A stretch of DNA of 64,000 nt from Antechinus flavipes. Its lineage: Eukaryota. Shown in pieces: positions 1,036 to 56,200 of the stretch. Positions within the stretch are counted from its first letter, which is position 1, and every line of letters starts with the position of its first letter. Location: NCBI RefSeq assembly GCF_016432865.1, contig NC_067403.1, positions 255,440,001 through 255,504,000 on the forward strand, given 5' to 3'. The notes beneath the pieces were generated by a model, which was not told the DNA's origin, did not search any database, and saw only the letters and a program-made list of their open reading frames with translations. The position numbers were made by a program, and so were the translations under genes.

Positions 1036-3019
1036 AAAATGGCGTGGTTCACAGAGGTTGGAGAGACTTACAGGGACTGATCCTAAGTAACATGAGCAGA
1101 ACCAAAAGAACATCCTACACGGTAACAAGAAAATTGTGCGATGTTCAGTTCTGATGTCCGGGGCTCTCTTCAGCAATGAGACAATCCAGGCCAGTTCCAA
1201 GGGTCTTGTGAGGGGAGAGCCGTCCGCATCTACAGGACTGCGGGGGCTGAGTGTGGATCCCAACAGAGCATGTTCACTCTTTTGTGGTTGTTTACTTGCA
1301 TTTTATTTTCTTTCTCATTTTTCCCTTTTTGATCCGATTTTTCCTGTCCCAGGGAATTGTATAAATGTGTCTGGAAGAACTGCACGTGTTTAACATATGG
1401 TGGATGACTTGCCATCTAGGGGAGGGGACGGGGGAAGGGAGGGAGAAAATTTGGAAGCCAGGGTTTTGCCAAGGTGAATGTTAAGAACGATCTATGCATA
1501 GGTTTTCAAAATGAAAAGCTCTAATGAAAAAAAAAAAAAAGAACATGGACTGTCAGAGCTGGGAGGGGCCTTCAAGACCACCTGATAAACTCCCCCATTT
1601 TACAGAGACAGAAAAGGAAACTCGAAGTGGGAAGTGATTTGCTTAGCCCAGAGAAGCGCTGGGAAGAAGCCTCCGAGTGGCCCGCCCTGCCCCCCACTCC
1701 GGCGGGGCCTCCGCACGCCTGCAGCACGCTTGGTCCAGCAGCATGTCCAAAAATGCCTCTAGCCCCAACCAAAGCGCCCCGGCCCTGTGGGATTTTCTCC
1801 AAATATGGGTGAGGAGCTGGGCCAGGAGCCTGCGGAGCATCTCGGGCTGAGAGCAGCCTCATTTTTTCCCATGGCCGGGATGTGTACGCAGCTCCGGCCC
1901 TTCCATTCCGCCAGCGCGGGCCAGATCTGCCAAAAGGGGGGGGCCGCAGGCCGAAGCGGGGAGCTCAGAGGCCCTGGGCGGCTGAGGTCACTCAGAGGGT
2001 GTGGGACAGGCCCGGGCGGGACAGATGCAAGCTCAGCCTCTGCTGGGAGGACCCCAGAAGCCTTCCCCTTTGCACTGTTCCCAGAAACCCCCTCGGGGGC
2101 AGCCAAGAGGAACCGGTGGAACTTGGGACTGGCCCCAGCTTCTCTGCAGACAGGATGCAGCTGGCTCTGGGCTGAGCCTGGAGGTCAGACTGGAGAGACC
2201 CTAAGCCTCATGTCACTGAAGGATGAGGCTCTGCTGGTGGAAGTACGAGCAGACACAGAGCAGTAACTAAGACCAGCAGGAAGTGAAGGAGGATCAGCCG
2301 CCCCGGCCGCCACCCCCGGTAGCATCCTCTGTGACCCACTACTCCCGCGGCCCGGGCACCTAGCAAGTCCCCGGGCTTCTGTGAGGCTTCGGCGCCCATG
2401 AAGTCTGGGGCCCTGGGTCGAAGCCACGGGGGCTCCACCCTAGTTACACTGCCTGATGGGGGGAGGGAGATACTCTTTCAGAACTCATTTCTACAATCAG
2501 TAACTGGAAAACAGTGGAACAGATTATGGTATCATTGCTTTAACAGACTAATGAGACACCGTAAAAACCCGAACCAACAAACCCCCCGGATCTCTTAGAC
2601 GTGATTCCGCAGAAAAATGGGAAGTCCTCTTTGAAGTACTGTAAAGCCAGAAGAGCCGGACCGCCCTATATTTTACTTTAGTTACTATTTTCAGTGAACA
2701 AAGGGCCCTTTTCTTCTCCCTACCCCCTATTTGGAGGGAAAAAAGTTAAAAAAAAAAAAAAAAAAGCCTTTGTAACAAATATGTGCTGATTACAGTTGCA
2801 TAAAAAGAAATAAATTCAAAGGAAGTAAGATATCGGATGGACGTGGAAACCGAGGAAAAAGCCGTTCTTCTTCTGCTTGCCAGCTCCTTTAGGTTCATGC
2901 TGTTAAACAGGCTACAATCGGAGCAGCAATGACCAATGCCCGACCCCTCCTGGCCTGGGAGAAGAGACGGGCAAATCTCCATTCTTCCTTTCTCTGGAGA
3001 GGGGGGGCCTTGTAGGGGC

Positions 3020-6000
3020 TGTGCCTGGCGTGCTCTCTGAACTCTCTGGGCTCTGTGGGCTCTCTTGGCATTCTGGGCTCTGTGGGCTCTCTGAGTTCTC
3101 TGGACACTCTGGGCTTTCTGGATTCTCTGGGTTCTCTGGATGCTCTGGACTCTCTGGATGCTCTGGGCTCTCTTGGCATTCTGAGCTCTCTGGGTGCTCT
3201 GAGCTCTGTGAGCGTTCTGGGCTCTCTTGGCATTCTGTGCTCTCTGGCTCTGTCAGTGCTCTAGACTCTGGGGTCTGTGGGTTCTCTGGACGCTCTGGGC
3301 TCTGTGGGCTCTCTCAGTGCTCTGGGCTCTGGGTACGCTGGGCACTCTGGGCTCTCTGGAGTCTCTGGGCACTCTGGGCTCCATGGGCACTCTGTGCTCT
3401 CTGAGTGCTCGGAACTCTCTGGGCTCTCTGGGCTCTTTTGGCATTCTGGGCTCTTTGGGCTCTGTGGGTGCTCTGGGCTCTATGGGCTCTCTTGGCATTC
3501 TGGGCTCTGTGGGCACTCTGGACTCTTTGGATTCTCTGGGCTCTTTGGGCTCTCTAGATGCTCTGAGTTCTCTGGATACTCTGGGCTCTCTGGACTCTCT
3601 GGACACTCTGGGTTCTCTGGATGCTCTGGACTCTCTGGACGCTCTGGGTTCTCTGGACACTCCAGGCTCTCTGGGCTCTCTGGGCTCTGTGGGCACTCTG
3701 GGCTCTGTGAGTGCTCTGGATTCTGTGGGTGCTCTGGGCTCTCTGGGCTCTCTGGGTGCTCTGGGTACGCTGGGCTCTCTGGGCGCTCTGGGCTCTCTGG
3801 GCTCCATGGGCACTCTGTGCTCTCTGGGCTCTTTTGGCATTCTGGGCTCTCTGGGCTCTGTGGGCGCTCTGGGCTCTGTGGGCTCTCTTGGCGTCCTGGC
3901 TCTCTGGGCTCTGTCAGTGCTCTAGACTCTGGGATCTGTGGGTGCTCTGGGCTCTCTGGACGCTCTGAGTTCTCTGGACACTCTGGGCTCTCTGGACTCT
4001 CTGGACACTCTGGGTTCTTTGGACGCTCTGGACTCTCTGGGTTCTCTGGACGCTCTGGACACTCTGGGCTCTCTTGGCATTCTGGGCTCTGTGGGCTCTG
4101 TGGGCTCTGTGGGTGCTCTGGGCTCTGTGAGTGCTCTGGACTCTGTGGGTGCTCTGGGCTCTCTTGGTGCTCTGGGCTCTGGGTACGCTGGGCTCTCTGG
4201 GTGCTCTGGGCTCTATGGGCTCTCTGAGCACTCTGGACTCTCTGGACTCTCTGTATTCTCTGTATTCTCTGTGCTCTCTGGGTGCTCTGGACTCTCTGTG
4301 CTCTCTGTGCTCTCTGGACTCTCTGTGCTCTCTGGATGCTCTGTGCTCTCTGTGCTCTCTGGGCTCTCTGTACTCTCTGGGCTCTCTTGACTCTCTGTGC
4401 TTTCTGGGCTCTCTGAACTCTCTGGACTCTCTGAACTCTCTGAACTCTCTGGACTCTCTGAACTCTCTGGGCTCTCTGGGCTCTTTGGACTCTCTGAGCT
4501 CTGTGGGATATCTTGACTCTCTGGACTTTCTGAACTCTCTGGACTCTCTGGGCTCTCTGGGTACTCTGGGCTCTGTGGGTGCTCTGGGCTCTGTGGATGC
4601 TCTGGGCTCTCTGGGACCTCTGATTGCTCTGGGCACTCTGGACTCTCTGGGCGTTCTGGGCTTTCTGGATTCTCTGTGCTCTGTGGGCTCTGTTGGCTCT
4701 GTGCGCTCTGTGGGTTCTCTGGGCTCTGTGGGCTCTCCAGGTGCTCTGGGCTCTCTGGACTCTCTGGACACTCTGGGTTCTCTGGATGCTCTGGACTCTC
4801 TGGACGCTCTGGGTTCTCTGGACACTCCAGGCTCTCTGGGCTCTCTGGGCTCTGTGCGCTCTGTGGGTTCTTTGGGCTCTCTGGGCGTTCTGGGTGCTCT
4901 GGGCTCCATGGGCGCTCTGGGCTCTCTGGACTCTGTGGGTTCTCTGGGCTATGTGGGCTCTCCAGGCGCTCTGGGCTCTCTGGGCGTTCTGGATGCTCTG
5001 GACTCCATGGGCGCTCTGGGCTCTCTGGACTCTGTGGGTTCTCTGGGCTCTGTGGGCTCTCCAGGTGCTCTGGGCGCTCTGGGCTCTCTGGACGTTCTGG
5101 GCGCTCTGGGCTCTCTGGATGTTCTGGGTGCTCTGGGCTCCATGGGCGATCTGGGCTCTCTGGGTGCTCTGGGCTCTCTGGACTCTGTGGGCTCTCTAGG
5201 GGCTCTGGGCACTCTGGGATCTCTGGGTGCTCTGGATGCTCTGGGCTCCATGGTGCTCTGGGCTCTCTAGACTCTGGGAGCTCTCTGGGCTCTCTGGGCA
5301 CTCTGGGTTCTCTGGGCTCTGTGGGCTCTCTGGGTGCTCTGGGCTCTCTGGGTTCTCTAAGCTCTGTGGGCTCTGTTGACTCTCTGGGCTCTGTGGCCTC
5401 TCTGGGCTCTCTGGGCGCTCTGGGCTCTCTGGGCTCTCTGGGCTCTGTGGCCTCTCTGGGCTCTCTGGGAGCTCTGGGCTCTCTGGGCTCTGTGGCCTCT
5501 CTGGGCGCTCTGGGAGCTCTGGGCTCTCTGGGCTCTGTGGCCTCTCTGGGCACTCTGGGCTCTCTGGGCTCTCTGGGTGCTCTAGGCTCTCTGGGTTCTC
5601 TGGGTGCGCTGGACTTTCTCAGCTCTCTGGGTTCTCTGGGTGTGCTGGGCTCTCTGGGTGCTCTGGGCACTCTGGGCTCTGTGGGCTCTCTGGGTGCCCT
5701 GGACTCTCTGGGCTCTCTGGGTGCCCTGGGCTCTCTGGGCTCCATGGGCTCTCTGGACTTTGTGGGCTCTCTGGGCACTCTGGGCTCCATGAGCTCTCTG
5801 GACACTCTGGGCTCTCTGGGCTCTGTGGGGGCCCTGCGCGCTTTGGGCTCTGTGGGGGCCCTGCGCGCTTTGGGCTCTGTGGGGGTGCTGGGCTCCATGA
5901 TCTGTCTGGGCACTCAGCTCTCTGGGTGCTCTGGGCTCTGTGGGCTCTCTGGGCTCTGTTGGGCTCTGTGGGCTCTGTTGGGCTCTCTGGGCGCTCTGGA

Positions 6001-6670
6001 CTCTCTGGGCGCTCTGGACTCTCTGGGCTCTGTGGGCTCTGTGGGCTCTGTGGACTCTGTGGGCTCTGGACTCTCTGGGCTCTGTGGGCTCTGGACTCTC
6101 TGGGCTCTGTGGGCTCTGTGAACTCTGTGGACTCTCTGGGCTCTGGACTCTGTGGGCTCTGTGGACTCTGTGGACTCTCTGGGCTCTGGACTCTCTGGGC
6201 TCTGTGGACTCTGTGGGCTCTGTGGGTTCTGGACTCTCTGGGCTCTCTGGGCGCTCTGGACTCTCTGGGCTCTGTGAGCTCTGTGAGCTCTGGACTCTCT
6301 GGGCTCTGTGGGCTCTGTGGACTCTCTGGGCTCTGTGGGCTCTGGACTCTCTGGGCTCTGTGGGCTCTGGACTTTCTGGGCTCTGTGGGCTCTGTGGACT
6401 CTGTGGACTCTCTGGGCTCTGGACTCTCTGGGCTCTGTGGGCTCTGGACTCTCTGGGCTCTGTGGGCTCTGGACTTTCTGGGCTCTGTGGGCTCTGTGGA
6501 CTCTCTGGGCTCTGGACTCTCTGGGCTCTGTGGGCTCTGTGGACTCTGTGGACTCTGTGGGTTCTGTGGGCTCTGTGGACTCTGTGGACTCTCTGGGCTC
6601 TGTGGGCTCTGGACTCTCTGGGCTCTGTGGGCTCTGTGGGCTCTGTGGGCTCTGTGGGTTCTCTGGGATA
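3020..6670. repeat. ~3.65-kb satellite-like array of mostly 9-bp units (GGCTCTCTG and variants GACTCTCTG, GGTGCTCTG, GGCTCTGTG, GGCACTCTG)
   Basis: Directly visible, with interspersed 7-bp units and larger block duplications (e.g. CTGTCAGTGCTCTAGACTCTGGG at ~3250 and ~3910). The + strand is very A-poor. Confidence 0.95.
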
Positions 6671-6999
6671 CGGTTGCTACAAACCTTGGTTTTCATGAAA
6701 TATTTTTTTCTGTTACAGGAAGAAGCCAATAGGCAGGGGTGGGCTGGGCTGGGGTGGGGAGTGTACCTGGGAAAGACTGTGATGTCAAAAAAAAGTCATC
6801 AGGGAAGGGTCTCCCCCAGACCCCCTTTATTTGGCCAGTGGACCCCACCACCTCCAGGGACCTCAGAGGCCAGTTCCACACATCCCCCTTAAACAGATGA
6901 GGAAAAGGGAGGGCCAGGGAGCACTAGCACTTATCCCTAAAAGTCTTAATAGAGCGGGGCTGGGCCTTCCGGCTCCCTCGGTGGGAAGTTGTGGGGAGG

Positions 7000-12116: not shown

Positions 12117-12467
12117 NNNNNNNNNNNNNNNNNNNNNNNNNNNNNNNNNNNNNNNNNNNNNNNNNNNNNNNNNNNNNNNNNNNNNNNNNNNNNNNNNNNN
12201 NNNNNNNNNNNNNNNNNNNNNNNNNNNNNNNNNNNNNNNNNNNNNNNNNNNNNNNNNNNNNNNNNNNNNNNNNNNNNNNNNNNNNNNNNNNNNNNNNNNN
12301 NNNNNNNNNNNNNNNNNNNNNNNNNNNNNNNNNNNNNNNNNNNNNNNNNNNNNNNNNNNNNNNNNNNNNNNNNNNNNNNNNNNNNNNNNNNNNNNNNNNN
12401 NNNNNNNNNNNNNNNNNNNNNNNNNNNNNNNNNNNNNNNNNNNNNNNNNNNNNNNNNNNNNNNNNNN
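12117..12467. other. Assembly gap (351 N)
   Basis: Run of N characters. Confidence 1.
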
Positions 12468-18473: not shown

Positions 18474-21400
18474 TCAGTCTTGCGGCTCCTCTGACCGCCA
18501 CTTGAGCGCGTGGTCCTTGTGGGCGTCAGGCAGGATCTGGTTGCGCATCCCTCCCAGCAAGTTGGACGTGGCTTCGGTGGCCAAGATGAGCGGCTTCACC
18601 ACCGTGGGGGGCAGCTGGCGGATCACCCCCCCGACGGCCCCCGTCAGCCCCTTCTGCTCGTGACCCCGAGAAGCAACATCACAGATGGTCTGGGCTGTGT
18701 CCAGGATGCCCTGGGAGGCGAGAGGAGGGAACGGGATAAAGCAACAATGAACAACAAAACAGGATTGTGGGGGGGGGAACACCAGGAGAGGGGGGAGGCT
18801 AGCTGGGGGGGTACCTCTCGCACGGTGTCGTAGGCCTTGGCCACACCTTCCCGAAGGTCGGCCGGCTGCTGTCCCTTGCGGAGTTTCCGGGCCGAGCGTT
18901 TGTCCTGAAGCGAGCGGGAGACCGGGGCGGCCGGGGACAGGATGTCATAAACTGTCTCGGCAGTCGCCTGGAAGGAGGAAGGCAAGGTAGAGGCCAAGCC
19001 CCCCGCACCCTCATCCTGCCCTGTCCCACTTCTGGTCAGTGGCGTCCAGCCCCTCCCTCTGCTGGGCACCCATGGCATCTGCCACCCCCACACATCCTTT
19101 ACACCATCTCTACATAAGGGCTCTTACAGGTGCTCCGCTTGGCCCTAGAGGGCCCACCTTGCCTTGGTGGGAGCTTACAGGGTGACCACCCCTTGACAAA
19201 ATCTCAAGCTGGAACTCCCAGGGCCGTCGAGTCCCACCCCGATGACATCAGCAGCTCCCGAGAACGAGCTGCTCTGTGAGGAAGAGAGCTCCCTGGGCCA
19301 GGCCCCTCCGCCCAATCTGGTCACCTGGATTGCCTGCACGAGCCGGTTACTGAGCTCCAGAGCAGCTGAAGCTGTGGAAGACCCGAAGGAGGCAGCCCCC
19401 CGCTGCAGCCCCCGCATGAGGCGTCCATCCCTCCGGTACTGCTCGATAGGAAGCCACAGCAAGTCTCTAAGGCCATGAACTAGAGCGAGAGAAGCAGGGT
19501 CAGGGCGCCCTCTCTCACCCCCGGCTTTTTCTACCCAACACGTTCTTCCCAGGAGGCCGAGAGTGGCCCACCCCCTTTCACCCTCTCGGGGGGCAGCCTT
19601 GCCATGAAGGTTTTTTCGGCCATCCCCACAAAAATGGTCACTTTAAAGCCCCTCCAACGTGGCCTGTCCGTGGATAAGCGGCACTCACAGAGCTGGACCA
19701 CTGAGTGCATGGGGCCCACGCCTCCCAGAAGCCCTGGCAGCTGGTTCTTCCGGATATCCTGTAGCCATTCATTGAGGGCATAGCCCAGCACCTTGTCAAC
19801 CCCCAAGAGCCTGTCCACAGAACACAGGGAAAAGGGGAAAGTTGAGTGGCTTCCTTCCAGAGTCACAAGGCCATCCTCACATGGAAGGCTCATGCTATAG
19901 TATCAGGATAGAGGGAGACGGATGCCCAGTTTTCAGCCTCAGACAGGGGCTTCCTGGGGGTGGAGGTGGGGAGAGAACATCACAGAGATTGGGGGTCTCA
20001 AGGAGCGGGGGTGGGGCTGCTGGGAAGGCTCACCCATGCCGACAGCAGAGACGTTTTAGCTTGAGCTCCGAACAATTTAGCTGGGCCAGGCCAATGAGGA
20101 TCCCAGCGAAGGTGCCCTGGGAGGGAGAGGTGGGCAGGTCGTTGCAGAGCCCGGGACTGGGGGGACTCAGGAGACCCCCAGACCCAGAGGGACACCTAGG
20201 CATCAGACACCAGGACTCAGGACCACTGCCTTCTATCCCTGCCACATCCCGGCCCCCTCCCCAGCCCGTGGAGATGATGCAACTCATGGCTCAGCACAGA
20301 GTCAACAAGATGGGGCTTGCTCACAGAGGAACCATGCACCATCCACCCCTCATTGTGGAGAACTGGGACCAGGCCACACAGCTACTCAATCGTGACCGGA
20401 CCAAGCACTTCGGGTCACCCTACATGCATCCATACATTCACCGGCAGCGGGCCCCAGGTTCCGGCACTCACCACTTGGTCCATGGTGACGTGCTTGCCGT
20501 GATAATCCAACCAAATCGGGACCTCGGAGGTAAATCGGAACTCCCTACAGAGGTACAATAAGGGTGGAAGGTGTATCAGCCCTCAGAGATGCTGGACCCG
20601 GCAGGCCGGCCTCCCTCCATTTCCTGTCCCGACTATCCCAGGCCCAATCAACACCTGAAATAAATGGGCTGCTCAGTGGAGGTTGCAGATGTGGATGTGG
20701 AGCTCTGTTCACTGACGGTGGTCTCCAGAGAGCTGCTCATCTCTGCCCCCTCTGGCAGCTTGTCTTGGGTGGCACTGGTCCGGACGGGAGGATCCTGGCG
20801 AGCTGAAAAGGAGGAGAGGAACAGGATGGACCCAGGTGTGAACGGGAGGCCCACTGGATGCCAAGAAGCCTGGGCAAGAGTGAAGGGCAGTGGGAAGGTC
20901 CCTGGGGGACCTTGCTCCTTACCACCTCCCACTCTGCTCTTCGGGAATCGGGTTCTCCTTTGCCCGACTTCAGATATGGGAGCCTAAAAGGCATTACAGC
21001 TTAAAGAATGGTCAGGAAGCCACATTTCTGCCTCTGGAACCTGAGGAGCCACCTTCTAAGCGAGTATCAATCAGGAGAGACCTTGGGGGGCACAGCACAG
21101 GGTGGCCCAGACTCAACTTACTTAGCCCCACTATGCCACAGGCAAACCTCTTAGACAAAGGCATAGGTCATCTGCTACTGAGAAGTCTCAGGCTTTGTTT
21201 CCTCTCCTGTCAAAGGAAGCTAATTCTAACCTGCCTATACCATCACAAGGTTGTGTGAAGGAAAATGTCAACAGCTGCAAGCTGCACCACTGCGGGCTGT
21301 AAAGAGAAGGGAATGAGGAGGAAAGGCCTCAGTTGTGCTGCTTTTCCCTGCCTGCGGTTCCTGGGCACTGGGCGGCAAACTGTCACCACTTGGTCTGTTC

Positions 21401-40040: not shown

Positions 40041-40450
40041 GGCCGGATCCGCCCGCCCGCGCTCGCCGCCGGCCGCGCCGCTCACTCGAGCCCCCGGCTC
40101 GGCCCGCCGCTCAACCCGGCGCCAGGCCACACCCCGCCTCGCTGCCATTGGTCGGCCCGGAGAGCGAGACTCGTTGATTGGTCGTATGGGCGGGGCGCCG
40201 GAAAGAGCCCCAGTTTTTCGCGGAGCGACATAGGTCTCGTGATGACGATCTGCGCCTGCGCGTTGCCCTCGGTCTTAGATGTCTTGAACTTTCCGAATGG
40301 GGCAAACAAGGTCGCGTGACGGCTGAGTCCGAGAAATAAGTCCCGAGGCGCAATGCGCATGTGCATTTCCGCCCCACCTCCCAGCTTCGGGCTCATGAAT
40401 TAAAGGGACAGTGTCCAATCAGCTACCCCTCTGGAGCTAAAAGGCATCGT
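39600..40450 (-). promoter_or_regulatory. ATG2A: ATG2A CpG-island promoter
   Basis: CpG-rich. Two minus-strand CCAAT boxes (40147-40151, 40177-40181), a GC box (40188-40195), and an NRF1-like TGCGCATGTGCA (40354-40365). Confidence 0.8.
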
Positions 40451-41300: not shown

Positions 41301-41306
41301 TTTATT
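41301..41306 (-). terminator. Likely polyadenylation signal of the SLC22-like gene
   Basis: TTTATT on the + strand, ~640 nt past the predicted stop and before the ATG2A promoter. Confidence 0.55.
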
Positions 41307-41671
41307 GGGTGAAACAACAGTGGGGCTTTGGGGGGAGCCTGGAGACCCATCTGGGAGGAGCCGCAGAGGGCCTTCCCCCCTCCCTGCCCCAGCCTCCGCC
41401 CAGCGCAGGGAGCAGTGTCTGAGGGCCGGAGCCTCCCGCAGGTGCGGCCGGGCCCAGAACGAGGGCGGTGCCGGCGAACACCTGTTCTGGGTCACGGCCT
41501 GTAACTAGGACAGAGTGAGGGAGTGAAGGAAGCAGGAAATGGTGCCGGAGGCCGGGGGCGCCTGCTCTTACTCAGGCTGGTCCCGGCTGGGAAAACTCCG
41601 GCTGGGAACCGCTGGGAGCGGGCAAGGGCCCGGGACGGAGCCGGTCTGAGGTGAGAGGGGAAGGGCCCGGC

Positions 41672-41975
41672 AGCTCCGGAACTCGGGTCTGGCGGCTCCA
41701 GAACTCAGGCCCGGCAGCTCCAGAACTCGGGTCTGGCGGCTCCAGAACTCAGGCCCAGCAGCTCCAGAACTCAGGCCCAGCAGCTCCAGAACTCGGGTCC
41801 AGCGGCTCCAGAACTCAGGCCCGGCAGCTCCAGAACTCGGGTCTGGCGGCTCCAGAACTCAGGCCCGGCAGCTCTGGAACTCGGGCCTGGCAGGTCCAGA
41901 ACTCAGGCCCAGCAGCTCCAGAACTCGGGCCCGGCAGGTCCAGAACTCAGGCCCGGCGGCTTCGGAACTCGGGTC
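41672..41975. repeat. 21-bp VNTR, ~14 copies (CAGCTCCAGAACTCAGGCCCG-type)
   Basis: Directly visible. It lies in the 3' UTR of the SLC22-like gene and overlaps the predicted stop. Confidence 0.9.
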
Positions 41976-44900
41976 TCCTGCTTCTGCCGCGCCGGAGCCT
42001 CTGTCCTCCCCTGCGCTGCGCTGGGGCCATCTCTTCGCAGGGACTAGAGCTTGGTCTGGAGGGGCTGGGCCCCCCGCCGTGGTTTCCTCAGCAGTCTGCT
42101 CCAGCATCTCCGGACCCTGGGGATGGGAGGGAAGTTGCCCCTTTTGGGGGCTCGGCCCCCCTTTGCCCCCAAGGGAGCTCTGGAGGCCTGGCCAGGAGAG
42201 GGTGAGCCCTGGGGGGGGGTGACTATACCCGGGCCAGAGACACCCCTGCGGAGGCCTGGAAGGGCCAAGGGAAGGAGGGCTGGGGGTCACCTACTGGCTC
42301 TGCGCTTGTTCCAAGGTGTCGGGCAAGGGCGCGCCCCTCGTCTCGGGCAGGAAGAGGACCAGGCAGCTGGTGGCCAGGACGCTGGCCCCGAAGAACACGG
42401 GCGGCAGGAGGGGGAGCGTGGGGCCGGCCAGCAGGACCAGGGGGGCCGTCACCCCGCCCAGGTGGCCCACCATGTTAGTGACGCCCATGCCAGTCATCCT
42501 GCGGAGCCGGGGGAAGGGCCGGGATTGAGAGCACAAAGACCCTCTCTCGGGGAGAAAGGGCCTCATCGGGGCCCCAGAGCTCGGAGCCCCAGAGCCCCAC
42601 AGAGCTCACTGCTCATCCAGTCGGTGCTCGGGAAACGTTTGCTCAGCAGCCTTCGAAGGGGCCCGGGCCAGGGGGGAGGGGGACAGGGGGGGCGCGGGGG
42701 ACTCACCGGAGGGAGGTCGGGAAGACTTCAGAGGCCACGAGGACAATGCAGCTGAGGGAGGCTGACATGAGCCCCTTGGACAGCACTGCCAGCCCCATGT
42801 GGAGGCGGCCCAGCTCTGCGGGCACAAGGGGTGGAGACCGCGTCAGCCAGGCCTGGGGGATGGGGAGCCGGGGGGGGATGGGGAGCTAGGGGGGATGGGG
42901 AGCCGGGGGGGGATGGGGAGCTGGGGCAGATGGGGAGCCGGGGGGGGGAAATGGGGAGCTGGGGGGGATGGGAAAGGCGAGCCCCTCGGGCCAAGCAAGG
43001 TCAGAGCCGGGAGGGTGAGAACCTGGACCGTGTGAGCCCGGAGAAGCCCTTGGAGCACTAAGGGACCTCCTGGGAGAGACTGAGAGCCTCAGGTGGCCCA
43101 AGGAGGCTCCCGTCCGGTCTAAATGGGACTAGCGGCCACCGCCTTCCTCCTCCCGGGCCCGGGATCCTCCCCAAAGCTCTTCCCACCAAAGCCGCCCCGA
43201 GTCCGTGTCTCGGCTCCCGCGCCCCTCAGAGGGGAAGGCTGAGTTGAGGGTTGAGGTCGGCCTTCCATCGCCCCCCACCTCTGCAGGGGGTCTGGCCGGG
43301 ACCCACCCGCTGGCACTGGGATGGCCCCCAGGAGGAGCCCCCCTCCGAGCAACGTGCAGGAGGCCAGGGTGAGCCTGCGTCCCAGGCAGTCGGCCAGCTT
43401 GGGCACCAGGAGGCGAAAGGGGAGATCTACGATCCCCAGGACGACCTGAACCAGGTACGGATCTTCGCCCGGGAAACGCTGGATGTCCAGGGCCAGAGAA
43501 AAGAAGGCCAGGCTGGCCGAGAACCTGGGACGGGAAGGCGGGGGTCACCCAAAGACCCCTCCCCACTCCCTCCCAGGGCGCCTCCCCTGGAAAAGGCCGC
43601 CGGTCCGGCGCCGGTCTGGACATGGCCGTCACTGCTCGGACCTCTTCTTCCCCGGCGATGGCGCGAGCCAGACTGGGGGCTCCAGGTCCCCCCGGGTCAG
43701 ACGTGCCCAGGTTGCCCTGCTGACCTTCTGTGTTCTACGTTCCACGGTCCCTCCCCCCTTCATGTTCCATGTTCTAGGTTCCACGGTCCCTTCTCCCTCT
43801 GAATTCTCGGTTCTGAAGCCCCTCCCACGCCCGGCGCGCCACGGTCTCTGTTCCGCGGTCACGGCCGTGTTATGCTCTAAGTTCTCCCCTAGCTCTGCCC
43901 TTGGGAGCCCCGAGGTTCTCTGCGCTTCTCCCATTCTGTGACCCACGAAGAGCAACACGACAAAGCTGCGGCCCTGAGGCCCCTTTAAGGAGCAGCAGCT
44001 GCTCAGTCAGCGGGAGCCCCTTCCAAAGGCTCGGCCGCCCGGACTTGGGTCCAGAGAAGCTGTCCCCGGGCCCGGCAGGAGGGGCTTTTCTCCCCCAGCT
44101 CCAGGCCTCCCCCTTGCCCCAGAGGCCTGGCTGTTGGGGTTCCGGGGACCTGCCAGGAGACCCAGCCCCCCCCTCGCCCTCGGCAGATGAAGCTGAGGCC
44201 CAGAGGGGTGACCCACCACCCGGGTGGTCTTGGGCGGGTCATTGCTCCTCTAGGCCTCAGTTTTCCCCATCTGTAAAACGAGAGGGTTGGGCGCAGTGAC
44301 TGGCTCTAGAACTAAGATGCTGGGAAGGACCTGGCCTCCCCTCCCCCCGCCCTTCCTTCCATCTTTGCCCCCCACGTTCCTGCTTCCCCGGCTCGCTCAC
44401 CAAATGCCCATGATACAAGCCAGCAGGGCCAGCATCTCCCGGGTCCGGAACAGGTCCAGGGTGGCGGCCCCTGGGGCTCCTGCAGCCTCCTCCTGAGAGT
44501 AGTCGGATTCCAGCATCTGTGGGCAAGAGAAAAGCCTCCGGGGGTGGGTGGGGGTGCCTGGAGAGGGTGATGGGCAGCCCCCCAGCAACCAGCCCCCCCC
44601 CGCTCTCCCCCCCTCCCCCCTAGGGAGAGCTACCCCCCCCCCGCTCTCCCCCCCTCCCCCCCAGGGAGAGCTGTTCCCCCCCCCCCCGCTGGCCCCTCCC
44701 CCCCAGGAGAGCTGCCCCCCGCCCCTGCCTTCCCCCCCTCACCTCCAGGGAGAGCTGGGCCCCCGCGGCCGGGACCCCGTTGATCCGCGACACCAGCTTC
44801 AGGGAGCGCAGGGCCTCTGCGAGGCGGCCCCTCACCGCCAGCCACCGGACGGACTCTGGGAGCCACCTGCGGAGCGGGACAGGGTGGGCGGCAGCCGGCC

Positions 44901-46482
44901 AGGCCTCCCCCGCCCCCCCCACGGCGAGGCCCCGGGTGCTCACCAGCCGCAGAGGAAGCAGAGGGCGAAGGGGGCCCCGGCGGCCAGCTGCAGGTGCCTC
45001 CAGCGCCGGAGGCCGAAGGCCAGAAGGGCCAGGTTGAGCTGCCCCAGACTGAGCACGAAGGAGAGGAGGCCGGACACGGCTGCGCGGCGGGAGGGCGGCG
45101 TCCACTCCAGAACTGGGGAGAGAGGCCCGGCTCACGCCCGGCAGGGGCGCTTTCGGGCCTGGTGATGGGCGAGGGCCGCCGGGAAGCCCGAGGTGGCAGC
45201 GGGGCGTGATCGGGCGCAGGGGCGGCGGAGCCGGGAGGGTCCCGGGGCAGCGTGGGGGGCAGTCTGGCCCCAGGGCGGGCGGGGGGTCACCTGCCCCTCA
45301 GGGAGCACCCCCCTCCCCCGGCCCCCTCCCCCGCACTCACCCAGGCCCAGGCCGTTGAGCACCAGGCCGGACATGCCGGAGCCGCAGAAGCAGCGGCACA
45401 CACAGTACACAGAGAAGGAGGGGGCCAGGGCTGCCCCCGTGCTCAGGGAAGCCACCTGGAGGAGGCACCAGAGGAAGACAGTCCGGCGGCCCAGCCTGGG
45501 GGGCGGGGCCGGGGTCAGGGCAGCCTGGGCTGGCCCGGCCCCACAGGCCCCCGAGCGGGGGAGACACCCCCAGGAAAGGGCCTCGGCCGCCCCATCTCGG
45601 GGACCCCCGACCCCCCTCCGGCTCCGGCTGCCCCGACGCTCACCTGTCCGCCAGCCCCCCGAACACGACGGCCCCCAGGAACACCCCCGCCATGTAAACC
45701 GACTGGGCCACCCTGGGGAGGCTTTTCAGGCTGCAGACCAGGTCCCACTGTGGGGGAGAGGGAGCAGAGCGAGGGGGGCTCAGGCGTGAGCCCGTGGAGG
45801 CTTGCCTCAGTTTCCCCCCTGCGTCTCCGGGGCCATTGCGGGGGCGTGGCACTAGTCACCTGCCTGGCAAAGCAGCGGGGGGGGGGGCAGAGTCTGGGGG
45901 AGGGGAGGGAAGAAGAGGAGGACCAGGCGGCCGAACCCTCCCCCTCTGCATCCAGGCGCCAACCTCCCCGGTCTCCCTTCACTTCTCACCTGGCAGTTTG
46001 CCTCCCTCCAAGACACTTGGAAGGAAACGCTCCTCCATCACCCCCCCCTTCCTTGGCCCCTTAGCGCCCCAGACCGGAAGCTTCAGCGGGGCCCCCAGCA
46101 CCGCAGGGGCTGCATAAGTGTCTAGGACGGGGCATTTATTAAGCACTTACTCTGTGCAAACGCCCCTCAGCTCTCGGCTTTTGCACCGTTTCCCCCCAAG
46201 CCTTTGCCCTGCCTCTCCCTTTACCGTCCGAGTAATTTGTTTTCTTCAGGAAATACGGCCCAAGAAGCAGCTTGCACAGGAACCCCCCCCCCCCCAGCTG
46301 CTGGTCCTCACCCCCCCCCTTACCTTCACACACACACACACACTCACACACACTCACACACACTGTGAGACACACACTGACACACATACACACTTACACA
46401 CACAGTGACACACACACACACACACACTCACACACACTCACACACACTGTGAGACACACACTGACACACATACACACTTACA

Positions 46483-46513
<31 letters not shown>

Positions 46514-47554
46514 TCTCCATCAGAGTGCAACGCCAGCCTCTTGACAAGAGGAAGGTTCCATTTTTGTCTTTTTGCATCCTCAGTGTGTACAGCTCAATGG
46601 CTGGTATACAGTAGAAATGTAATAAATGCTCCATCAACTTCTACCTCGTGACCTTGGGCAATCACTTCGCCTCCCTGAGCCTCAGTTTTCTGTAAAACAA
46701 TGGGTTTGTTGGACTCGTCTGCCCCCCGGCCCCCACGTTAGGGCTCTCTCGCAGTCCTTCTCACCCACGCCCTCTCATGACCAGCTTCGCACGGTGCCTG
46801 GCACATAGTAGGCGCTTTGCCCTTCCGGACGATGCTCTCCTCTTTCCCCATCGGTTTTCACACTGAAACCCGGCCCATCCCTCGAGGTTCCCCTCCTCCT
46901 CCCAGGAGGCTGCTGCCCCGGCCCTGCAGCCCAGAAGGGACTTCTCCCTCCTTGAACTCCCACGATACCTTGTTTTTTTACCAAGTTATTTCCCCAGATG
47001 TTTCTCATGCTCTTCCTGGAGAACTTTCCCGTGACCTTTAAAGCCCCCCACAGGGAGACCCGCGTTCCAACCTGCCTCAGATGCTGCCTAGCTGTGTGGT
47101 CTCAGGCCAGTCACTTTCCCCTTTGAGCCCCAGTTTTCTCATCTGGAAAGGGGGGAGATGGTAGCAGCCCCTCCCCTGGTTGGGAGGCTCGGGGTGATCC
47201 GGGTACCTCGGTGACAATGGTGGTCTGAACTGTGGTGAGGTTGTAGACCCAGCCTTCCCGACAAGCCTCCGTCTCATTGGTAGCGTTGCCCCGGGGGCGA
47301 AGGCAGGTCTCCGGCTGCCCCCCGGCCTCCGCCGGCCACGGCTCGCTGGGGCTCCTGCAGTGATGGTCGGGGGTGGAGGCCGTGAAGTTCTGGAGGAACC
47401 CGTGGGTGCCCACGAAGGCAAAAGGCACGAACAAGATGGCCAGGTGGACCATCTGGAAGCGACCCCACCCTCCCACCTGCTCCAGCAGGCTCCCCAGCCC
47501 CTTTGCCTTCCTCCCCGTCCCCCCTTCCGCTCCCGGGGCCCCGTTCCTGCCCAT
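41947..47554 (-). CDS. SLC22-family (organic anion transporter-like, MFS) protein; 10 exons, ~551 aa (516 aa if intron 9 is read through)
   Basis: Family motifs LLEQVGGWGRFQ, QNFTA-TPDHHC, GWVY-TIVTEWDLVC, GGLADRLGRR, EWTP, WLPESVRWL, DLFRT, LGRR, SEVFPTSLR and FLPETRGAPLPDT. Exons, all GT-AG and phase-consistent with no stops: 47207-47554, 45644-45747 (104), 45341-45495 (155), 44944-45112 (169), 44743-44866 (124), 44401-44516 (116), 43307-43524 (218), 42707-42815 (109), 42295-42498 (204), tentative last exon 41947-42055. The exon-size series matches the OAT/URAT1 gene structure as I recall it. The paralogue cannot be named. Confidence 0.9.
42856..42972. repeat. G-rich ~13/26-bp tandem repeat (GGGGATGGGGAGC..)
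   Basis: Directly visible in SLC22 intron 7. Confidence 0.8.
46325..46512. repeat. Compound (CA)n tract with an 84-bp direct duplication
   Basis: CTGTGAGACACACACTGACACACATACACACTTAC occurs at 46363 and again at 46447. Confidence 0.9.
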
Positions 47555-47599
47555 GCTGCCCCAGCCCTCAAGCCGCCCTCCTTGGAACTGACCACACTA

Positions 47600-47700
47600 A
47601 CTCAGGGAGAGCAAGGTCCAGTTTATTCAACCGAGAGACGCTGAGTTACCAGAAGCCAGCTTGGGATGCTGAAAGGTCATAGGGCAAAGGTCACTGGATA
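47600..47700 (-). promoter_or_regulatory. Putative proximal promoter of the SLC22-like gene with overlapping DR1 (HNF4-type) sites
   Basis: AGGTCA-T-AGGGCA-A-AGGTCA at 47674-47693, ~120-140 nt upstream of the ATG. An AT-rich GAATAAA (minus strand) lies at ~47624-47630. Confidence 0.65.
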
Positions 47701-48149
47701 TGGGTATTTGGGGAAGCACAGGATGTGGGGCATGGGGTGAGGGGTCAGAAGCCGAAGATGGGGAGTCGGAATATAAGGGGTGAAGAAGTCTGGGGGGAAG
47801 GGGAAAGGGCTTGGCGGGTGTGGGGTCTGGCCAGGCCAAAGAAAAGGAGGGTGGGGGCAGTTAGAGGAGGAGGGGCTGGGGGTGGGATGCTGGGAAGGAC
47901 TTCAGGAGTGAGACCCAGGGCTGGCAGCCTCACACTCCCCTCCCCATCACTTCAACTAGTTTTTGCTTATTTTTGCAGTAAGTGCCCCTCCTTCTCCCCC
48001 TCGGTGGGCCCCCAGACCGAAGTCCCCATCAATTCGTTTCATCCAGGGAGGGGGCTGACTCTGGCGGGGCGGGGTTAGTCATCCCTCTCCCCCGCCCCCC
48101 TCAATTCCAATCTGGCCCTTTAATCCGGAGACTATGATGTCACCGAAGA

Positions 48150-49800: not shown

Positions 49801-50227
49801 GAAGATTAACCGTTTCTCTCCCTGGTCTTTCTCTCCCTGGTCTTCTCCTCCCTCCCCGCTCCGGCCCCCTCCCTCCCTCTCTCCACCGCCTCTGTTTCTG
49901 CTCTAGGATCATTCTACCTCGACTTCCCCTCAATAAGAACTCTGTAACCAGCTTCTCCTGCCCCTCCCCCAAGGGCCTGCCACCTGAGGACCCCCCTCTT
50001 CTAGCTGCCCCCCAGGGACTGACTGGTTGCTTGGTAGGGCCCTGGGGGGGAGGCAGGGGGCGTAGTTCTTGTCTCTGAGCCCCTCGTTACCAGGTCCGTA
50101 CCCTGGCCAGCATGGGTCAGCCAGGGGCTCCCTGTTAGCCAGGACTTTGGCAGAGTAGGCATCTGGTAGTGGGGGGACACCTTCCCCTCCCCCCGTGCCC
50201 CCCGACGCTGCGGCCCCCTTAGTCACC

Positions 50228-53200: not shown

Positions 53201-56200
53201 TGCAGTTCCTGGAAAAGGATGCGACCCTGACCGAGCACGTGAGTGACCAGGGCGCCGCATCCTCCCTGGGGGGCGGGCGGCCTCCGCTCCCTCCTCTGAC
53301 CCCCCTCTGCCCCGCAGGTGATCCGGGGATTGCTCAAATACTGGCCCAAAACCTGCACCCAGAAGGAGGTACCGGGGAAGCTGCTGCAGGGACGGGGGGG
53401 GGGGGGGCATCTCCGGGGGGGGGGGGCATCTCCGGCGAGGGGGGACTGAAGGCCGCCCGTCCGCAGGTGATGTTCCTGGGGGAGATGGAGGAGATTCTGG
53501 ACGTCATCGAGCCCTCCCAGTTTGTCAAGATTCAAGAACCCCTCTTCAAACAGATTGCTCGCTGTGTCTCCAGCCCCCACTTCCAGGTATGGGGGGAGGG
53601 CAGGGCGGTGCCTCAGATCCGGCCCCGGACAGCACCTCGGAGCCCCCTGTCACCTGGGGGGAGACACAGGAAGGACCCGGGGGGTCACCGGGTCCAGCTT
53701 CTTTGTTTACAGATGGGGAAACTGAGGCCCAGAAAGGCGGGGCCCGAGAGGAGGCCCTTAGACCAGGGGGACAAGAGATCCGTGTCCTTAGTCCAGGAAT
53801 AGCCCCTTCCTTGCCCTTCACCACGTGGGTGACGTTGCGCCCCGTCAGTGCCATCTCTGTGCCTCGCTTTCCCCATAAGGGTGGGAGTCGGCCCTGGAAG
53901 TTTCTAACCCGTCACTGTGAGTCGCCGGCAGCCCCGGCCTCTCTGGGCCTGTCTCTAAAACCAGAGAGTTGGGCCGGGTGCGGTCGGAGTCGGCTCCCAC
54001 TCGACAGGGCGCCTGGGGAGCGCGGGGGGCCGGCTTTGGCGCTGCCCTCTGCGGGCCTCAGTTTCCCCCGTGTTCCGGCCCAGATCTAGACCCCTGGGAC
54101 GGACCCCCCGAGGGGGCCGGGGAGGGGCTTCGGCCCAGCCCCCGCTCACCGGGCGCCCCTTCCCCAGGTTGCAGAGCGGGCTCTGTATTTCTGGAACAAT
54201 GAATACATCCTGAGCCTCATTGAGGACAATTGCCACACCGTGCTGCCTGCTGTGTACGGGACCCTCTACCGCGTCTCCAAGGAGCATTGGAACCCGTGAG
54301 TGCCCGCGGGACCGACTGCCCCCTCCCCCCCGCCCAGGCCCAACGTCCTGGGCCAGCCCTGGCTGAGTGCCCGCCGTGTGCCCGGCCCCGGGCCCCGAGA
54401 AAGGCAAAGCAGCTACCGGGAGGAGTGGGGTCGGTGCAGGGGGCGCCCGATGGAAATGCGGGAGCGGCAGGGCCGGAGCCCCGGGGTGCAGGAACTACAG
54501 GTGGGGGCGGCCAGAGCCAGGATCTCACCTTTGAGTCTGGGGGTCATGGGGAGCCCGGGGATTGTTGAAGGGGGAAAGGGATGGTGTGGGGGACGTGATC
54601 AGAGCTGCCCCTTGGCACCGCAATGTGACAGCTGAGTGAAGGGGGGGGCAGGGATGGCCTGTGTCCTAAGGCTCTCCCAGCCCTGACACCCCCTGTTCTA
54701 GGTCCCTCCCAGCCCTGACATTCCATGTTCTAAGGCTCTGACATCCCTGTTCCAAGCTCTCCTAGCTCTTACATTCCCAGTTCTAAGCCTTCTCCCAGCC
54801 CTGACACCCCCTGTTCTAAGTCCCCAGCCCTGACATTCCATGTTCTAGGTCCCTCCCAGCCCTGACACCTCCTATTCTAGGTCCCTCCCAGCCCTGACAC
54901 CCCCTGTTCTAGGTCCCCGGCCTCCGGCCCATCTCAGAACTCTAGAGCTCGGCAGCCAAGGCCGCCCTGAGCCCAGCGCGCTGGCTCCTCACTCCCTCCG
55001 AGGGGGAACGCGGGCCCTGCTTGCGGACCTCCAGGGATGGGGGTCGCCCCTTCCGGATCAGCCGGATTGTCGGGAATCCGTCCCTGACTCCGGCCACAGG
55101 GGGCTCCCTCTCCCCCTCCTCACTGCCCCCGGCCAGCCCTCGGGCCCAAACCCACGGAGCCGGTCCCTTGCCTGGGATTCCCTCGGATGCTCCGGCCCCC
55201 CAGGAGGCCGCCCGCGCCCCGTTTCTTTGTGAGCCACGGATGGGAAGCCCTCCCTCCTGGCTGCCCCCCCCACTGGACCTTCTGCAGCTCTTCACTGCCC
55301 TCCTAGAGCCCAGGGCTTCAGTGGGGACCCCCAGGGCGGGGCCCAGCAGGCCTACGGCCCCTCATCCTCCAAGCTTTCCTCTCTGTGCAACCCAGGGTCC
55401 CGGCAGCTTTCTCCGATGCCCCATCCCACTCATTCACACTCCACTAAGACCGCCGGGTCTTTTTCAGATGGGTGATATTTAGCAATGTCTCCCATGCCTC
55501 ATGAAAATAATTTCTCGAGCCCTGGGCTAGAACTGGCTCCGACATTTAGCACCCGGTGACTTTGTGTAGGTCCCCGAACCTCTCTGGGGCTCATTTTTCT
55601 CCTCTGTCAAATGAGACGTGAGCTCTGAGGTCGCGTAAAGCCCTCCCCTCACCCCCGTGGCTTCTCTGCTCTGGGTTCTGGGTTCGAAAGCTGGGTCCGT
55701 TCCGAGAAATGGAGCTTTGTTGCTGAGGGAGGCCGGGGGGGGGGGGGCACTGCCCTCCTGTTTCCTGCCCAAGTCAGAGCCTGTCTGAGGGCTCGGCTCC
55801 AGGGGCGGGAGTCGGGATTTTCTCCTGGAAAAGACTTGGGGGAGCACTGGGGCGGGAGGACCGGCGAGTCACCGGCAGGAGGGATCAGCGTTGGCCATCG
55901 TGGCCTGAGAGGCAAAAGTGGGAGAGCATGAGGGCAATTAGCGGGGGTGTGGGAGGGGCTCTGTGCCACCGAGGGAGGCCTTTAGGTGTGGGATGGCTGC
56001 CTCTCACTGACGGAGGCCTTCAGGCAAGGACTTGCCCAGGGTCCTGGGTGCTGGGAGGGGGGGGCTGCCCCTGGCCCCGGCTCCCCCTCCGCCTCCCAGG
56101 TCTCACCTCCTGCCCTTCTCCCACCCCCAGGACCATCGTGTCTCTGATCTACAACGTGCTTAAAACCTTCATGGAGATGAACGGGAAGCTGTTCGATGAG

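What the first reader, a model, noticed from the sequence alone, without database searches (positions are those of the whole stretch)
41301..47700. An intact, divergent SLC22/OAT-like gene between ATG2A and PPP2R5B
Seen: a 10-exon ORF with canonical splice sites, no frameshift or premature stop, the family exon-size series, a promoter candidate and a poly(A) signal. Established (from memory): in human, ATG2A and PPP2R5B are head-to-head neighbours with no protein-coding gene between them, and the OAT genes lie elsewhere on 11q12-13. Inference: this is either an ancestral paralogue lost in eutherians or a marsupial-specific translocated duplicate. Retained introns exclude retroposition. It may be an uncharacterised SLC22 subfamily member.
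Basis: partly seen in the sequence, partly recalled or inferred. Interest (0 to 1): 0.85.

Follow-up and report, generated by a model that had tools for sequence, protein, structure and literature searches.

The report
Ancient OAT-type transporter gene placentals lack
Between ATG2A and PPP2R5B this marsupial keeps an intact, selectively constrained SLC22 organic-anion-transporter-type gene that echidna and turtles have at the same spot, that no placental protein set contains, and that databases label inconsistently as OAT1-, OAT3- or OAT6-like.

Summary
On the minus strand, 47554 to 42044, lie 10 coding exons (348/104/155/169/124/116/218/109/204/73 nt), all GT-AG, with no internal stop. One AATAAA lies 737 nt after the stop.

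The window is from a dasyurid: the protein is 95% identical to the Sarcophilus model. RefSeq already predicts the gene at this position in about 11 marsupials, named variously SLC22A6-like, SLC22A20(-like) or OAT3-like. It is none of these.
- Marsupials have separate true OAT1 and OAT6 orthologues.
- The ML tree puts the gene with echidna/platypus, turtle, caecilian and crocodilian/snake genes.
- An AU test rejects union with OAT6 (p=7e-5).

Echidna shows the same PPP2R5B / gene / ATG2A order; Trachemys has the gene directly upstream of ATG2A. No placental protein joins the clade. So "ancestral paralogue lost in eutherians" is supported and "marsupial-specific duplicate" is rejected.

Purifying selection acts on it (omega 0.20; LRT against 1 gives 2dlnL=381).

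All seven marsupial sequences carry His at the TM11 arginine (OAT1 R466), which is Arg in all 34 other sequences compared. Several alpha-ketoglutarate-site residues also differ.

The scan earlier noted a different extra OAT gene beside SLC22A6 in this genome.

The parts
47207..47554 (-). Coding exon 1 (348 nt). It holds the ATG at 47554-47552, a 17-aa N-terminal extension, TM1 and a shortened extracellular loop with 4 Cys and 4 N-x-S/T sites.
   Evidence: The PDB search gives OAT1 as best match at E=1e-18. It is 72% identical to Gracilinanus XP_044536672.1 over residues 5-116.
45644..45747 (-). Coding exon 2 (104 nt). It holds the TEWDLVC motif, TM2 and the start of the MFS motif GGLADRLGRR.
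45341..45495 (-). Coding exon 3 (155 nt).
44944..45112 (-). Coding exon 4 (169 nt). It holds TM5, with Ser220 and Leu223 in place of OAT1 Gly227 and Tyr230.
44743..44866 (-). Coding exon 5 (124 nt).
44401..44516 (-). Coding exon 6 (116 nt), encoding the central cytoplasmic loop.
43307..43524 (-). Coding exon 7 (218 nt, against 215 in OAT1). It holds TM7-TM8, with Arg376 in place of OAT1 Lys382.
   Evidence: The 218-nt size is shared with the echidna and turtle genes.
42707..42815 (-). Coding exon 8 (109 nt). It holds TM10, with Leu432, Ser433 and Val436 in place of OAT1 Phe438, Asn439 and Phe442.
42295..42498 (-). Coding exon 9 (204 nt, donor CA|GTAGGT). It holds TM11-TM12. The His460 codon CAC at 42464-42462 replaces the Arg that all the other compared OAT-group sequences have.
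42044..42116 (-). Coding exon 10 (73 nt including the TAG). It encodes the cytoplasmic tail VRRCWSRLLRKPRRGAQPLQTKL.
   Evidence: The size and tail match five other marsupials.
41301..42043 (-). Putative 3' UTR. It ends at the only AATAAA (41306-41301) and contains a 22-bp x 14 minisatellite at 41664-41970.
   Evidence: The transcript end is inferred, not observed.
47555..47800 (-). Promoter-proximal block conserved among six marsupials. It includes two TGACCTTTG-type nuclear-receptor half-site repeats (HNF4-like DR1) at 47669-47694.
   Evidence: The motif reading rests on my own knowledge of the HNF4 consensus, and binding was not tested.

Best explanation
This is a functional, protein-coding member of the OAT (SLC22A6/8/20) subclade of the SLC22 major-facilitator transporters. 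It belongs to an old tetrapod lineage of ATG2A-linked SLC22 genes. Marsupials and monotremes kept one copy between PPP2R5B and ATG2A. Turtles keep it plus a tandem neighbour of the crocodilian/snake type. Placental mammals lost it. The 539-aa protein should work as a 12-helix rocker-switch carrier in a plasma membrane, because the gating salt-bridge residues are intact (OAT1 R161, E212, R219, D378, K431, E447, R454). Its substrate cavity is remodelled. Across the turtle-to-marsupial clade the alpha-ketoglutarate-site residues are changed (G227S, Y230L, Y353F, K382R, F438L, T463M). In marsupials alone, the TM11 Arg that OAT1 needs for chloride and anion handling is His. I therefore infer that it does not run the OAT1-type dicarboxylate/organic-anion exchange, and that it carries a different substrate set, possibly less anionic or pH-dependent. 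Shown here: gene structure, orthology, synteny, selection, fold and residue states. Inferred: transport activity, substrate class, expression and promoter use.
For: The gene is an intact 10-exon ORF. It aligns without gaps over 516 aa to Gracilinanus, and the exon sizes are identical. Orthologues occur in about 11 marsupials, echidna, platypus, turtles and crocodilians, and no placental protein exceeds 42% identity. The careful ML tree supports marsupial+monotreme at 100/100, plus turtles at 97/93, plus caecilian at 100/97, plus crocodilian/snake at 99/96. The order B56 / gene / ATG2A holds in Sarcophilus, Sminthopsis, Dromiciops, Trichosurus and echidna. In Gracilinanus and Trachemys the gene sits directly upstream of ATG2A. 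The tandem neighbour in turtle is of the snake/crocodilian type. Pairwise dN/dS is 0.16-0.29 and the tree-wide omega is 0.198, with lnL -5018.6 against -5209.0 at omega=1. The AlphaFold model of the 95%-identical Sarcophilus protein has pLDDT 83.6, and its best PDB matches are OAT1 and URAT1 at TM 0.78-0.92. The roles of OAT1 R466, K382, G227, Y230 and F438 come from PMC10643130.
Against: A search for spliced protein fragments spanning exons 2-6 found none in the protein collection. Placental loss rests on the absence of annotated proteins and on my memory of the human and mouse gene order, because no placental genome could be searched. The marsupial proteins score only 376-381 bits on TIGR00898, against a cut-off of 551 and 670 for OAT1. 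That shows strong divergence. R466A and R466K abolish transport in human OAT1 (PMC10643130), so a His at this position could in principle mean loss of classical activity.
Confidence: 0.82

Rival explanations
1. It is simply the marsupial orthologue of SLC22A20 (OAT6), as RefSeq names the Sarcophilus gene.
For: The RefSeq name of P0173 is 'solute carrier family 22 member 20 [Sarcophilus harrisii]'. From memory, human SLC22A20P lies a few hundred kb from PPP2R5B.
Against: Marsupials have a separate gene that is 69-72% identical to placental OAT6 (P0355, P0377 and P0378). The window protein is only 39% identical to OAT6. The tree places true marsupial OAT6 with placental OAT6 at 100/100. The AU test rejects uniting the window clade with amniote OAT6 (dlnL 70.5, p=7e-5).
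Confidence: 0.02
2. It is a marsupial-specific duplicate of OAT1 or OAT3 that was translocated into the ATG2A-PPP2R5B interval.
For: RefSeq names it 'SLC22A6-like' or 'OAT3-like'. OAT1 is the best solved-structure match.
Against: Echidna has the orthologue between the B56 gene and ATG2A, and Trachemys has it directly upstream of ATG2A. These genes group with the marsupial genes, not with OAT1 or OAT3. The clade-specific 218-nt exon 7 is shared with echidna and turtle, against 215 nt in OAT1.
Confidence: 0.03
3. It is a silent or decaying gene: the ORF is still open, but in this species it is no longer expressed or useful.
For: No transcript evidence was obtained. The protein is fast-evolving, with stem branches of 0.59 and 0.44 substitutions per site. 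It has lost a residue that is essential in OAT1.
Against: Omega is 0.20 across six marsupials that span the deepest marsupial split, and 0.16 on the window-Sarcophilus pair alone. All ten exons, the splice sites, the start and stop codons, the poly(A) signal and the proximal promoter block are conserved. The gating residues are intact.
Confidence: 0.06
4. Placentals did not lose it. Instead the placental URAT1/OAT4 pair (SLC22A12/A11), which lies nearby on the same chromosome arm, descends from this ATG2A-linked cluster after relocation and rapid change.
For: Placing URAT1 inside the 17-sequence ATG2A-linked clade is not rejected (dlnL 8.5, p-AU 0.13). URAT1 shares Phe353, Met463 and Met455 with the marsupial gene. 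The published view is that A11/A12 are a mammalian expansion (PMC4633038).
Against: URAT1 as sister of, or nested within, the mammalian copies is rejected (dlnL 40.4, p=0.003). The free tree puts URAT1 outside the clade. URAT1 keeps Lys382 and Arg466. Long branches make both tests fragile.
Confidence: 0.07

Closest known systems
SLC22A6 (OAT1), the renal organic anion/dicarboxylate exchanger (rat and human cryo-EM structures such as 8SDU, 8BVR and 9MAU)
   Same: It has the same fold (Foldseek E=5e-35, TM 0.78-0.86). The 10-exon plan has nearly identical exon sizes. It keeps the four loop cysteines, the MFS motif and the gating salt-bridge residues.
   Different: Identity is only about 40%. The extracellular loop is about 24 aa shorter, and there is a 17-aa N-terminal extension. 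G227S, Y230L, Y353F, K382R, F438L, N439S, F442V and R466H change all three ligand or chloride sites defined in PMC10643130. Marsupials have their own OAT1 about 1.3-1.8 Mb away.
SLC22A20 (OAT6), the olfactory-mucosa OAT whose name RefSeq gives to the Sarcophilus orthologue
   Same: It belongs to the same OAT subclade and the same chromosomal neighbourhood.
   Different: Identity is 39%. The two form separate clades, and the AU test rejects their union. A true marsupial OAT6 exists.
Unnamed RefSeq 'SLC22A6-B-like' genes of echidna, platypus, turtles, crocodilians and snakes
   Same: They form the same clade and sit at the same locus beside ATG2A. The echidna and turtle genes have the 218-nt exon 7. 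The monotreme, turtle and caecilian genes share the Arg382, Phe353 and Met463 signature.
   Different: They keep the TM11 Arg, which marsupials changed to His. Identity is 60% to monotreme and 45-47% to turtle proteins. The crocodilian/snake type is a tandem sister copy that mammals lack.

Membership tests
SLC22 / MFS transporter (TC 2.A.1.19) | 12-helix MFS fold with a large TM1-TM2 extracellular loop and a TM6-TM7 cytoplasmic loop | tested here: met
   The AF2 model of the 95%-identical Sarcophilus orthologue has pLDDT 83.6 and pTM 0.83. Its top 45 PDB matches are all SLC22 structures. The test was made on the orthologue because the spliced window model has no reference.
SLC22 / MFS transporter (TC 2.A.1.19) | Match to family profiles (Pfam PF00083/PF07690; NCBIfam TIGR00898) | tested here: inconclusive
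   The orthologues carry PF00083 and PF07690. TIGR00898 matches at E=1e-112 but scores 376-381 bits, below the 551 cut-off. Human OAT6 (499) and the turtle orthologue (496) are also below it, while OAT1 scores 670. Single exons are too short for Pfam.
SLC22 / MFS transporter (TC 2.A.1.19) | Signature motifs: the G-x-x-x-D-R-x-G-R-R loop after TM2, the TIVTEWDLVC motif before TM2, four loop cysteines and N-glycosylation sequons | tested here: met
   These were read directly in the translation: GGLADRLGRR, TIVTEWDLVC, Cys66/84/98/121, and N57, N90, N93 and N105. The motif definitions come from my own knowledge of the family.
SLC22 / MFS transporter (TC 2.A.1.19) | Family exon plan (104/155/169/124/116/215/109/204) | tested here: met
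   The window has 104/155/169/124/116/218/109/204. Gracilinanus OAT1 has 104/155/169/124/116/215/109/204.
OAT subclade (OAT1/OAT3/OAT6/URAT1 group) | Groups inside the subclade in a phylogeny | tested here: met
   It lies inside the 100/99 clade that holds OAT1, OAT3, OAT6 and URAT1, to the exclusion of the SLC22A13, OCTN-like and fly sequences.
OAT subclade (OAT1/OAT3/OAT6/URAT1 group) | [quoted passage not shown] | tested here: not met
   It is His in the window and in all six other marsupial orthologues, and Arg in 34 of 34 other sequences.
OAT subclade (OAT1/OAT3/OAT6/URAT1 group) | Alpha-ketoglutarate-coupled exchange site (Gly227, Lys382, Tyr353) | tested here: not met
   The window has Ser220, Arg376 and Phe346. 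This bears on the coupling mode, not on ancestry.
SLC22A20 (OAT6) orthologue | Sister to placental OAT6, as the single copy in marsupials | tested here: not met
   A separate marsupial OAT6 exists at 69-72% identity. The AU test gives p=7e-5.
SLC22A6 (OAT1) orthologue | Sister to placental OAT1 and located beside SLC22A8 | tested here: not met
   Gracilinanus OAT1 (P0221) is 69% identical to rat OAT1, groups with it, and lies about 1.75 Mb away.

The most novel reading that the evidence does not exclude
In marsupials this carrier may no longer be an organic-anion/dicarboxylate exchanger. The TM11 Arg has been replaced by a titratable His that stayed fixed under purifying selection since the deepest marsupial split, and the aromatic cavity residues have been replaced by aliphatic ones. 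The protein could therefore have switched charge selectivity or become pH-gated. That would make it a functional SLC22 subtype that placental pharmacology has never sampled.
Probability: 0.3. Interest if true: 0.6.

Novelty: new member of a known kind. Interest (0 to 1): 0.45.

Why it matters
OATs set the renal and barrier handling of drugs, toxins and metabolites, and the family's evolutionary accounts are built on human and mouse gene sets. This locus shows an OAT-subclade gene that dates back at least to early tetrapods and was dropped by placentals. Automated annotation mislabels it as OAT1, OAT3 or OAT6, which would corrupt orthology tables and comparative pharmacology for marsupials, including drug dosing in devils, koalas and wallabies. 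It is also a natural experiment on the TM11 arginine, which is treated as a defining feature of OATs. Together with the separate extra OAT beside SLC22A6 noted earlier in this scan, it suggests that the placental OAT repertoire results partly from loss and not only from expansion.

Tried and rejected
No read-level evidence on splicing, expression or base accuracy was obtained. The tandem-repeat scan stopped at 46600. The whole window was used again only in a local script alignment against the Sarcophilus locus.
2. The sequencing-run list is coded and most rows have unknown type. The two RNA runs hold only 6% of the words, which could be repeats. This is not used as evidence.
3. Pfam on single exons gave nothing above threshold.
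4. My first model ended at a TAG after exon 9, giving 516 aa. That was a misparse of the donor CA|GTAGGT, and the orthologue exon maps corrected it.
5. A search with Sarcophilus residues 115-337 for transcript-derived fragments found none. This is a blank, not proof of silence.
6. Literature searches found no paper that describes this paralogue, and none on ATG2A/PPP2R5B adjacency.
7. The spliced window protein was joined only inside scripts, for alignment, the tree and dN/dS. It was not sent to any database tool. Searches used exon 1 by reference and stored orthologue proteins.
Full report
**Observation**

The region holds a minus-strand gene. Stop-to-stop frames and splice-site inspection gave nine clean exons. 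Comparison with orthologue gene maps fixed the last junction. Exon 9 ends CA|GTAGGT at 42295, and exon 10 (42116-42044) supplies the G of that codon, 23 further residues and the TAG.

The model is 348/104/155/169/124/116/218/109/204/73 nt, which gives 1620 nt and 539 aa. All introns are GT-AG and there is no internal stop.

The exon series is that of the family. Gracilinanus OAT1 is 381/104/155/169/124/116/215/109/204/85.

The only AATAAA between the stop and ATG2A is at 41306-41301, 737 nt downstream. Sarcophilus, Sminthopsis, Dromiciops and Trichosurus each have one AATAAA 430-770 nt after their stop. The window's putative 3' UTR carries a 22-bp x 14 minisatellite.

**Context**

- The window stretch 18477-18674 (minus strand) is the C-terminus of ATG2A (E=4e-35 to 8KBX).
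- The stretch 54123-54296 (plus strand) is a PP2A B56 exon.
- Collinear alignment with the Sarcophilus locus puts the ATG2A start near 40350 and the B56 start near 50215.
- The order is therefore PPP2R5B on the plus strand, a 2.7 kb gap to the transporter's ATG, the transporter gene running away from it on the minus strand, and then the ATG2A start about 1 kb beyond the transporter's poly(A) signal on the same strand.
- Calling the B56 gene PPP2R5B rests on synteny and on product length (494-497 aa), not on a direct test.

**Species**

The protein is 95.0% identical to the Sarcophilus model and 88.6% to Sminthopsis. Non-coding identity to Sarcophilus is about 80-87%. The window therefore comes from another dasyurid.

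**What the gene is**

Exon 1, searched by reference against 1.84 billion representatives, has one outstanding hit. It is Gracilinanus XP_044536672.1 'SLC22A6-like' (E=3e-47); the next hits are at 1e-16.

Searching with that protein lists orthologues at these identities to the query:
- about 11 marsupials at 74-92%;
- echidna and platypus at about 60%;
- turtles at 46-48%;
- crocodilians at 45%;
- the best placental proteins are OAT1 at 39-40%.

Source names for the marsupial genes vary: SLC22A6-like, SLC22A20-like, SLC22A20 and OAT3-like.

A search with dugong SLC22A20 shows that marsupials have a separate, true OAT6 at 69-72% identity (P0355, P0377, P0378). Gracilinanus also has a true OAT1 that is 69% identical to rat OAT1.

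A careful IQ-TREE analysis (50 sequences, LG+C20+F+G4) gives these supports:
- marsupial copies 100/100;
- plus monotremes 100/100;
- plus turtles 97/93;
- plus a caecilian 100/97;
- plus a crocodilian/snake group 99/96.

This clade is apart from OAT6 (which includes marsupial OAT6), OAT1, OAT3 and URAT1.

The AU tests gave these results:
- Union with amniote OAT6 is rejected (dlnL 70.5, p=7e-5).
- Union of the mammalian copies with URAT1 is rejected (p=0.003).
- URAT1 somewhere inside the wider 17-sequence clade is not rejected (p=0.13).

**Synteny**

- The order B56 gene, transporter, ATG2A holds in Sarcophilus, Sminthopsis, Dromiciops and Trichosurus.
- In Gracilinanus only ATG2A was recorded as a neighbour.
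- Echidna has the same three-gene order.
- In Trachemys the gene lies directly upstream of ATG2A. A second SLC22 gene sits just upstream of it, and that gene is 64-69% identical to the snake/crocodilian group.

The locus is therefore ancestral to amniotes. Mammals inherited one copy, and no placental protein set contains it. That human and mouse have nothing between ATG2A and PPP2R5B is from my memory and was not tested.

**Is it functional?**

Codon alignments of six marsupial coding sequences (528 codons) give pairwise dN/dS of 0.16-0.29; window against Sarcophilus is 0.164. A GY+F3X4 model on the species tree gives omega 0.198. Fixing omega at 1 costs 190 log-likelihood units, so 2dlnL=381.

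The start codon, splice sites, stop codon, poly(A) signal and about 150 nt of proximal promoter are conserved. The promoter block includes a doubled TGACCTTTG element at 47669-47694. It resembles an HNF4-type DR1 site, which is my reading and is untested.

**How it probably works**

The AlphaFold model of the Sarcophilus orthologue is confident (pLDDT 83.6). Its best solved matches are OAT1 and URAT1.

The gating residues of OAT1 are all kept: R161, E212, R219, D378, K431, E447 and R454. The ligand sites defined for OAT1 (PMC10643130) are altered.
- Mostly shared with the monotreme, turtle and caecilian genes: G227S, Y230L, Y353F, K382R, F438L and T463M.
- Marsupial-specific: N35G/S and F442V/I.
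- Fixed in all seven marsupials at positions that are at least 90% conserved elsewhere: L146F, R336L, A465G and R466H.

In human OAT1, R466A and R466K are inactive, and Gly227 marks the alpha-ketoglutarate-driven members. I therefore infer a working carrier whose coupling and substrate range differ from OAT1. The specifics are inference.

**Novelty**

I found no paper on this paralogue. Automated models exist, so the gene is not unseen, but its identity as a distinct ATG2A-linked lineage missing from placentals is not recorded in what I could search.

The scan's note s1-196613 had flagged the Arg-to-His change, and I confirm it. Note s1-184864 describes a different extra OAT beside SLC22A6 in this genome. 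In Gracilinanus I saw a second SLC22 gene just 3' of OAT1, which fits that note.

The spliced window protein was built only inside scripts. It was never sent to a database tool.

Noticed in passing
L003:1-5544 (Trachemys scripta, upstream of the orthologue): A second SLC22 gene (568 aa) lies in tandem just upstream of the turtle orthologue. It is 64-69% identical to the snake and crocodilian '6-B-like' proteins. The ATG2A-linked locus was therefore once a two-gene cluster.
   Followed up: partly
L008:10001-49654 (Dromiciops gliroides): A very divergent extra SLC22 gene (P0255, named 'SLC22A20-like') is 34-42% identical to everything compared and sits on a long branch. It lies about 270 kb from the transporter on the PPP2R5B side and has an Sdh5-domain ORF inside an intron. 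Its identity is unresolved.
   Followed up: partly
L009:28570-36632 (Gracilinanus agilis): Another SLC22 gene (539 aa) lies directly 3' of marsupial OAT1. I did not determine whether it is OAT3 or the extra gene.
   Followed up: no
window 41664-41970: A 22-bp x 14 minisatellite (GGCCCGGCAGCTCCAGAACTCA) lies in the putative 3' UTR. It accounts for about 300 nt of the 737 nt between the stop codon and the poly(A) signal, a distance of 430-770 nt in four other marsupials.
   Followed up: partly
window 42855-42972, 44593-44764 and 46327-46513: Three introns carry repeat arrays: a G-rich 17/35-bp array in intron 8, a C-rich 41/84-bp array that begins in intron 5 and runs about 20 nt into exon 5, and an exact 84-bp x 2.2 CA-rich duplication in intron 1.
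   Followed up: no
window about 2750-6900: A long block of short tandem repeats on the plus strand reads through as WALWAL/LGSVGS-type pseudo-ORFs of up to 265 codons. It is probably a minisatellite array.
   Followed up: no
window 12117-12467: A run of 351 N, either an assembly gap or masking. It was left untouched.
   Followed up: no
window 47669-47694 (minus strand, about 115-140 nt upstream of the ATG): A doubled TGACCTTTG(CCC) element is conserved in dasyurids and Dromiciops and partly in Gracilinanus and Trichosurus. It resembles an HNF4 DR1 site, the factor class known to drive OAT1 and OAT3 in kidney.
   Followed up: partly
L004:1-209 (Sarcophilus): A cystine-knot/DAN-type gene lies beyond PPP2R5B. 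From memory, this matches GPHA2 as the next gene in human, so the wider gene order is conserved.
   Followed up: no
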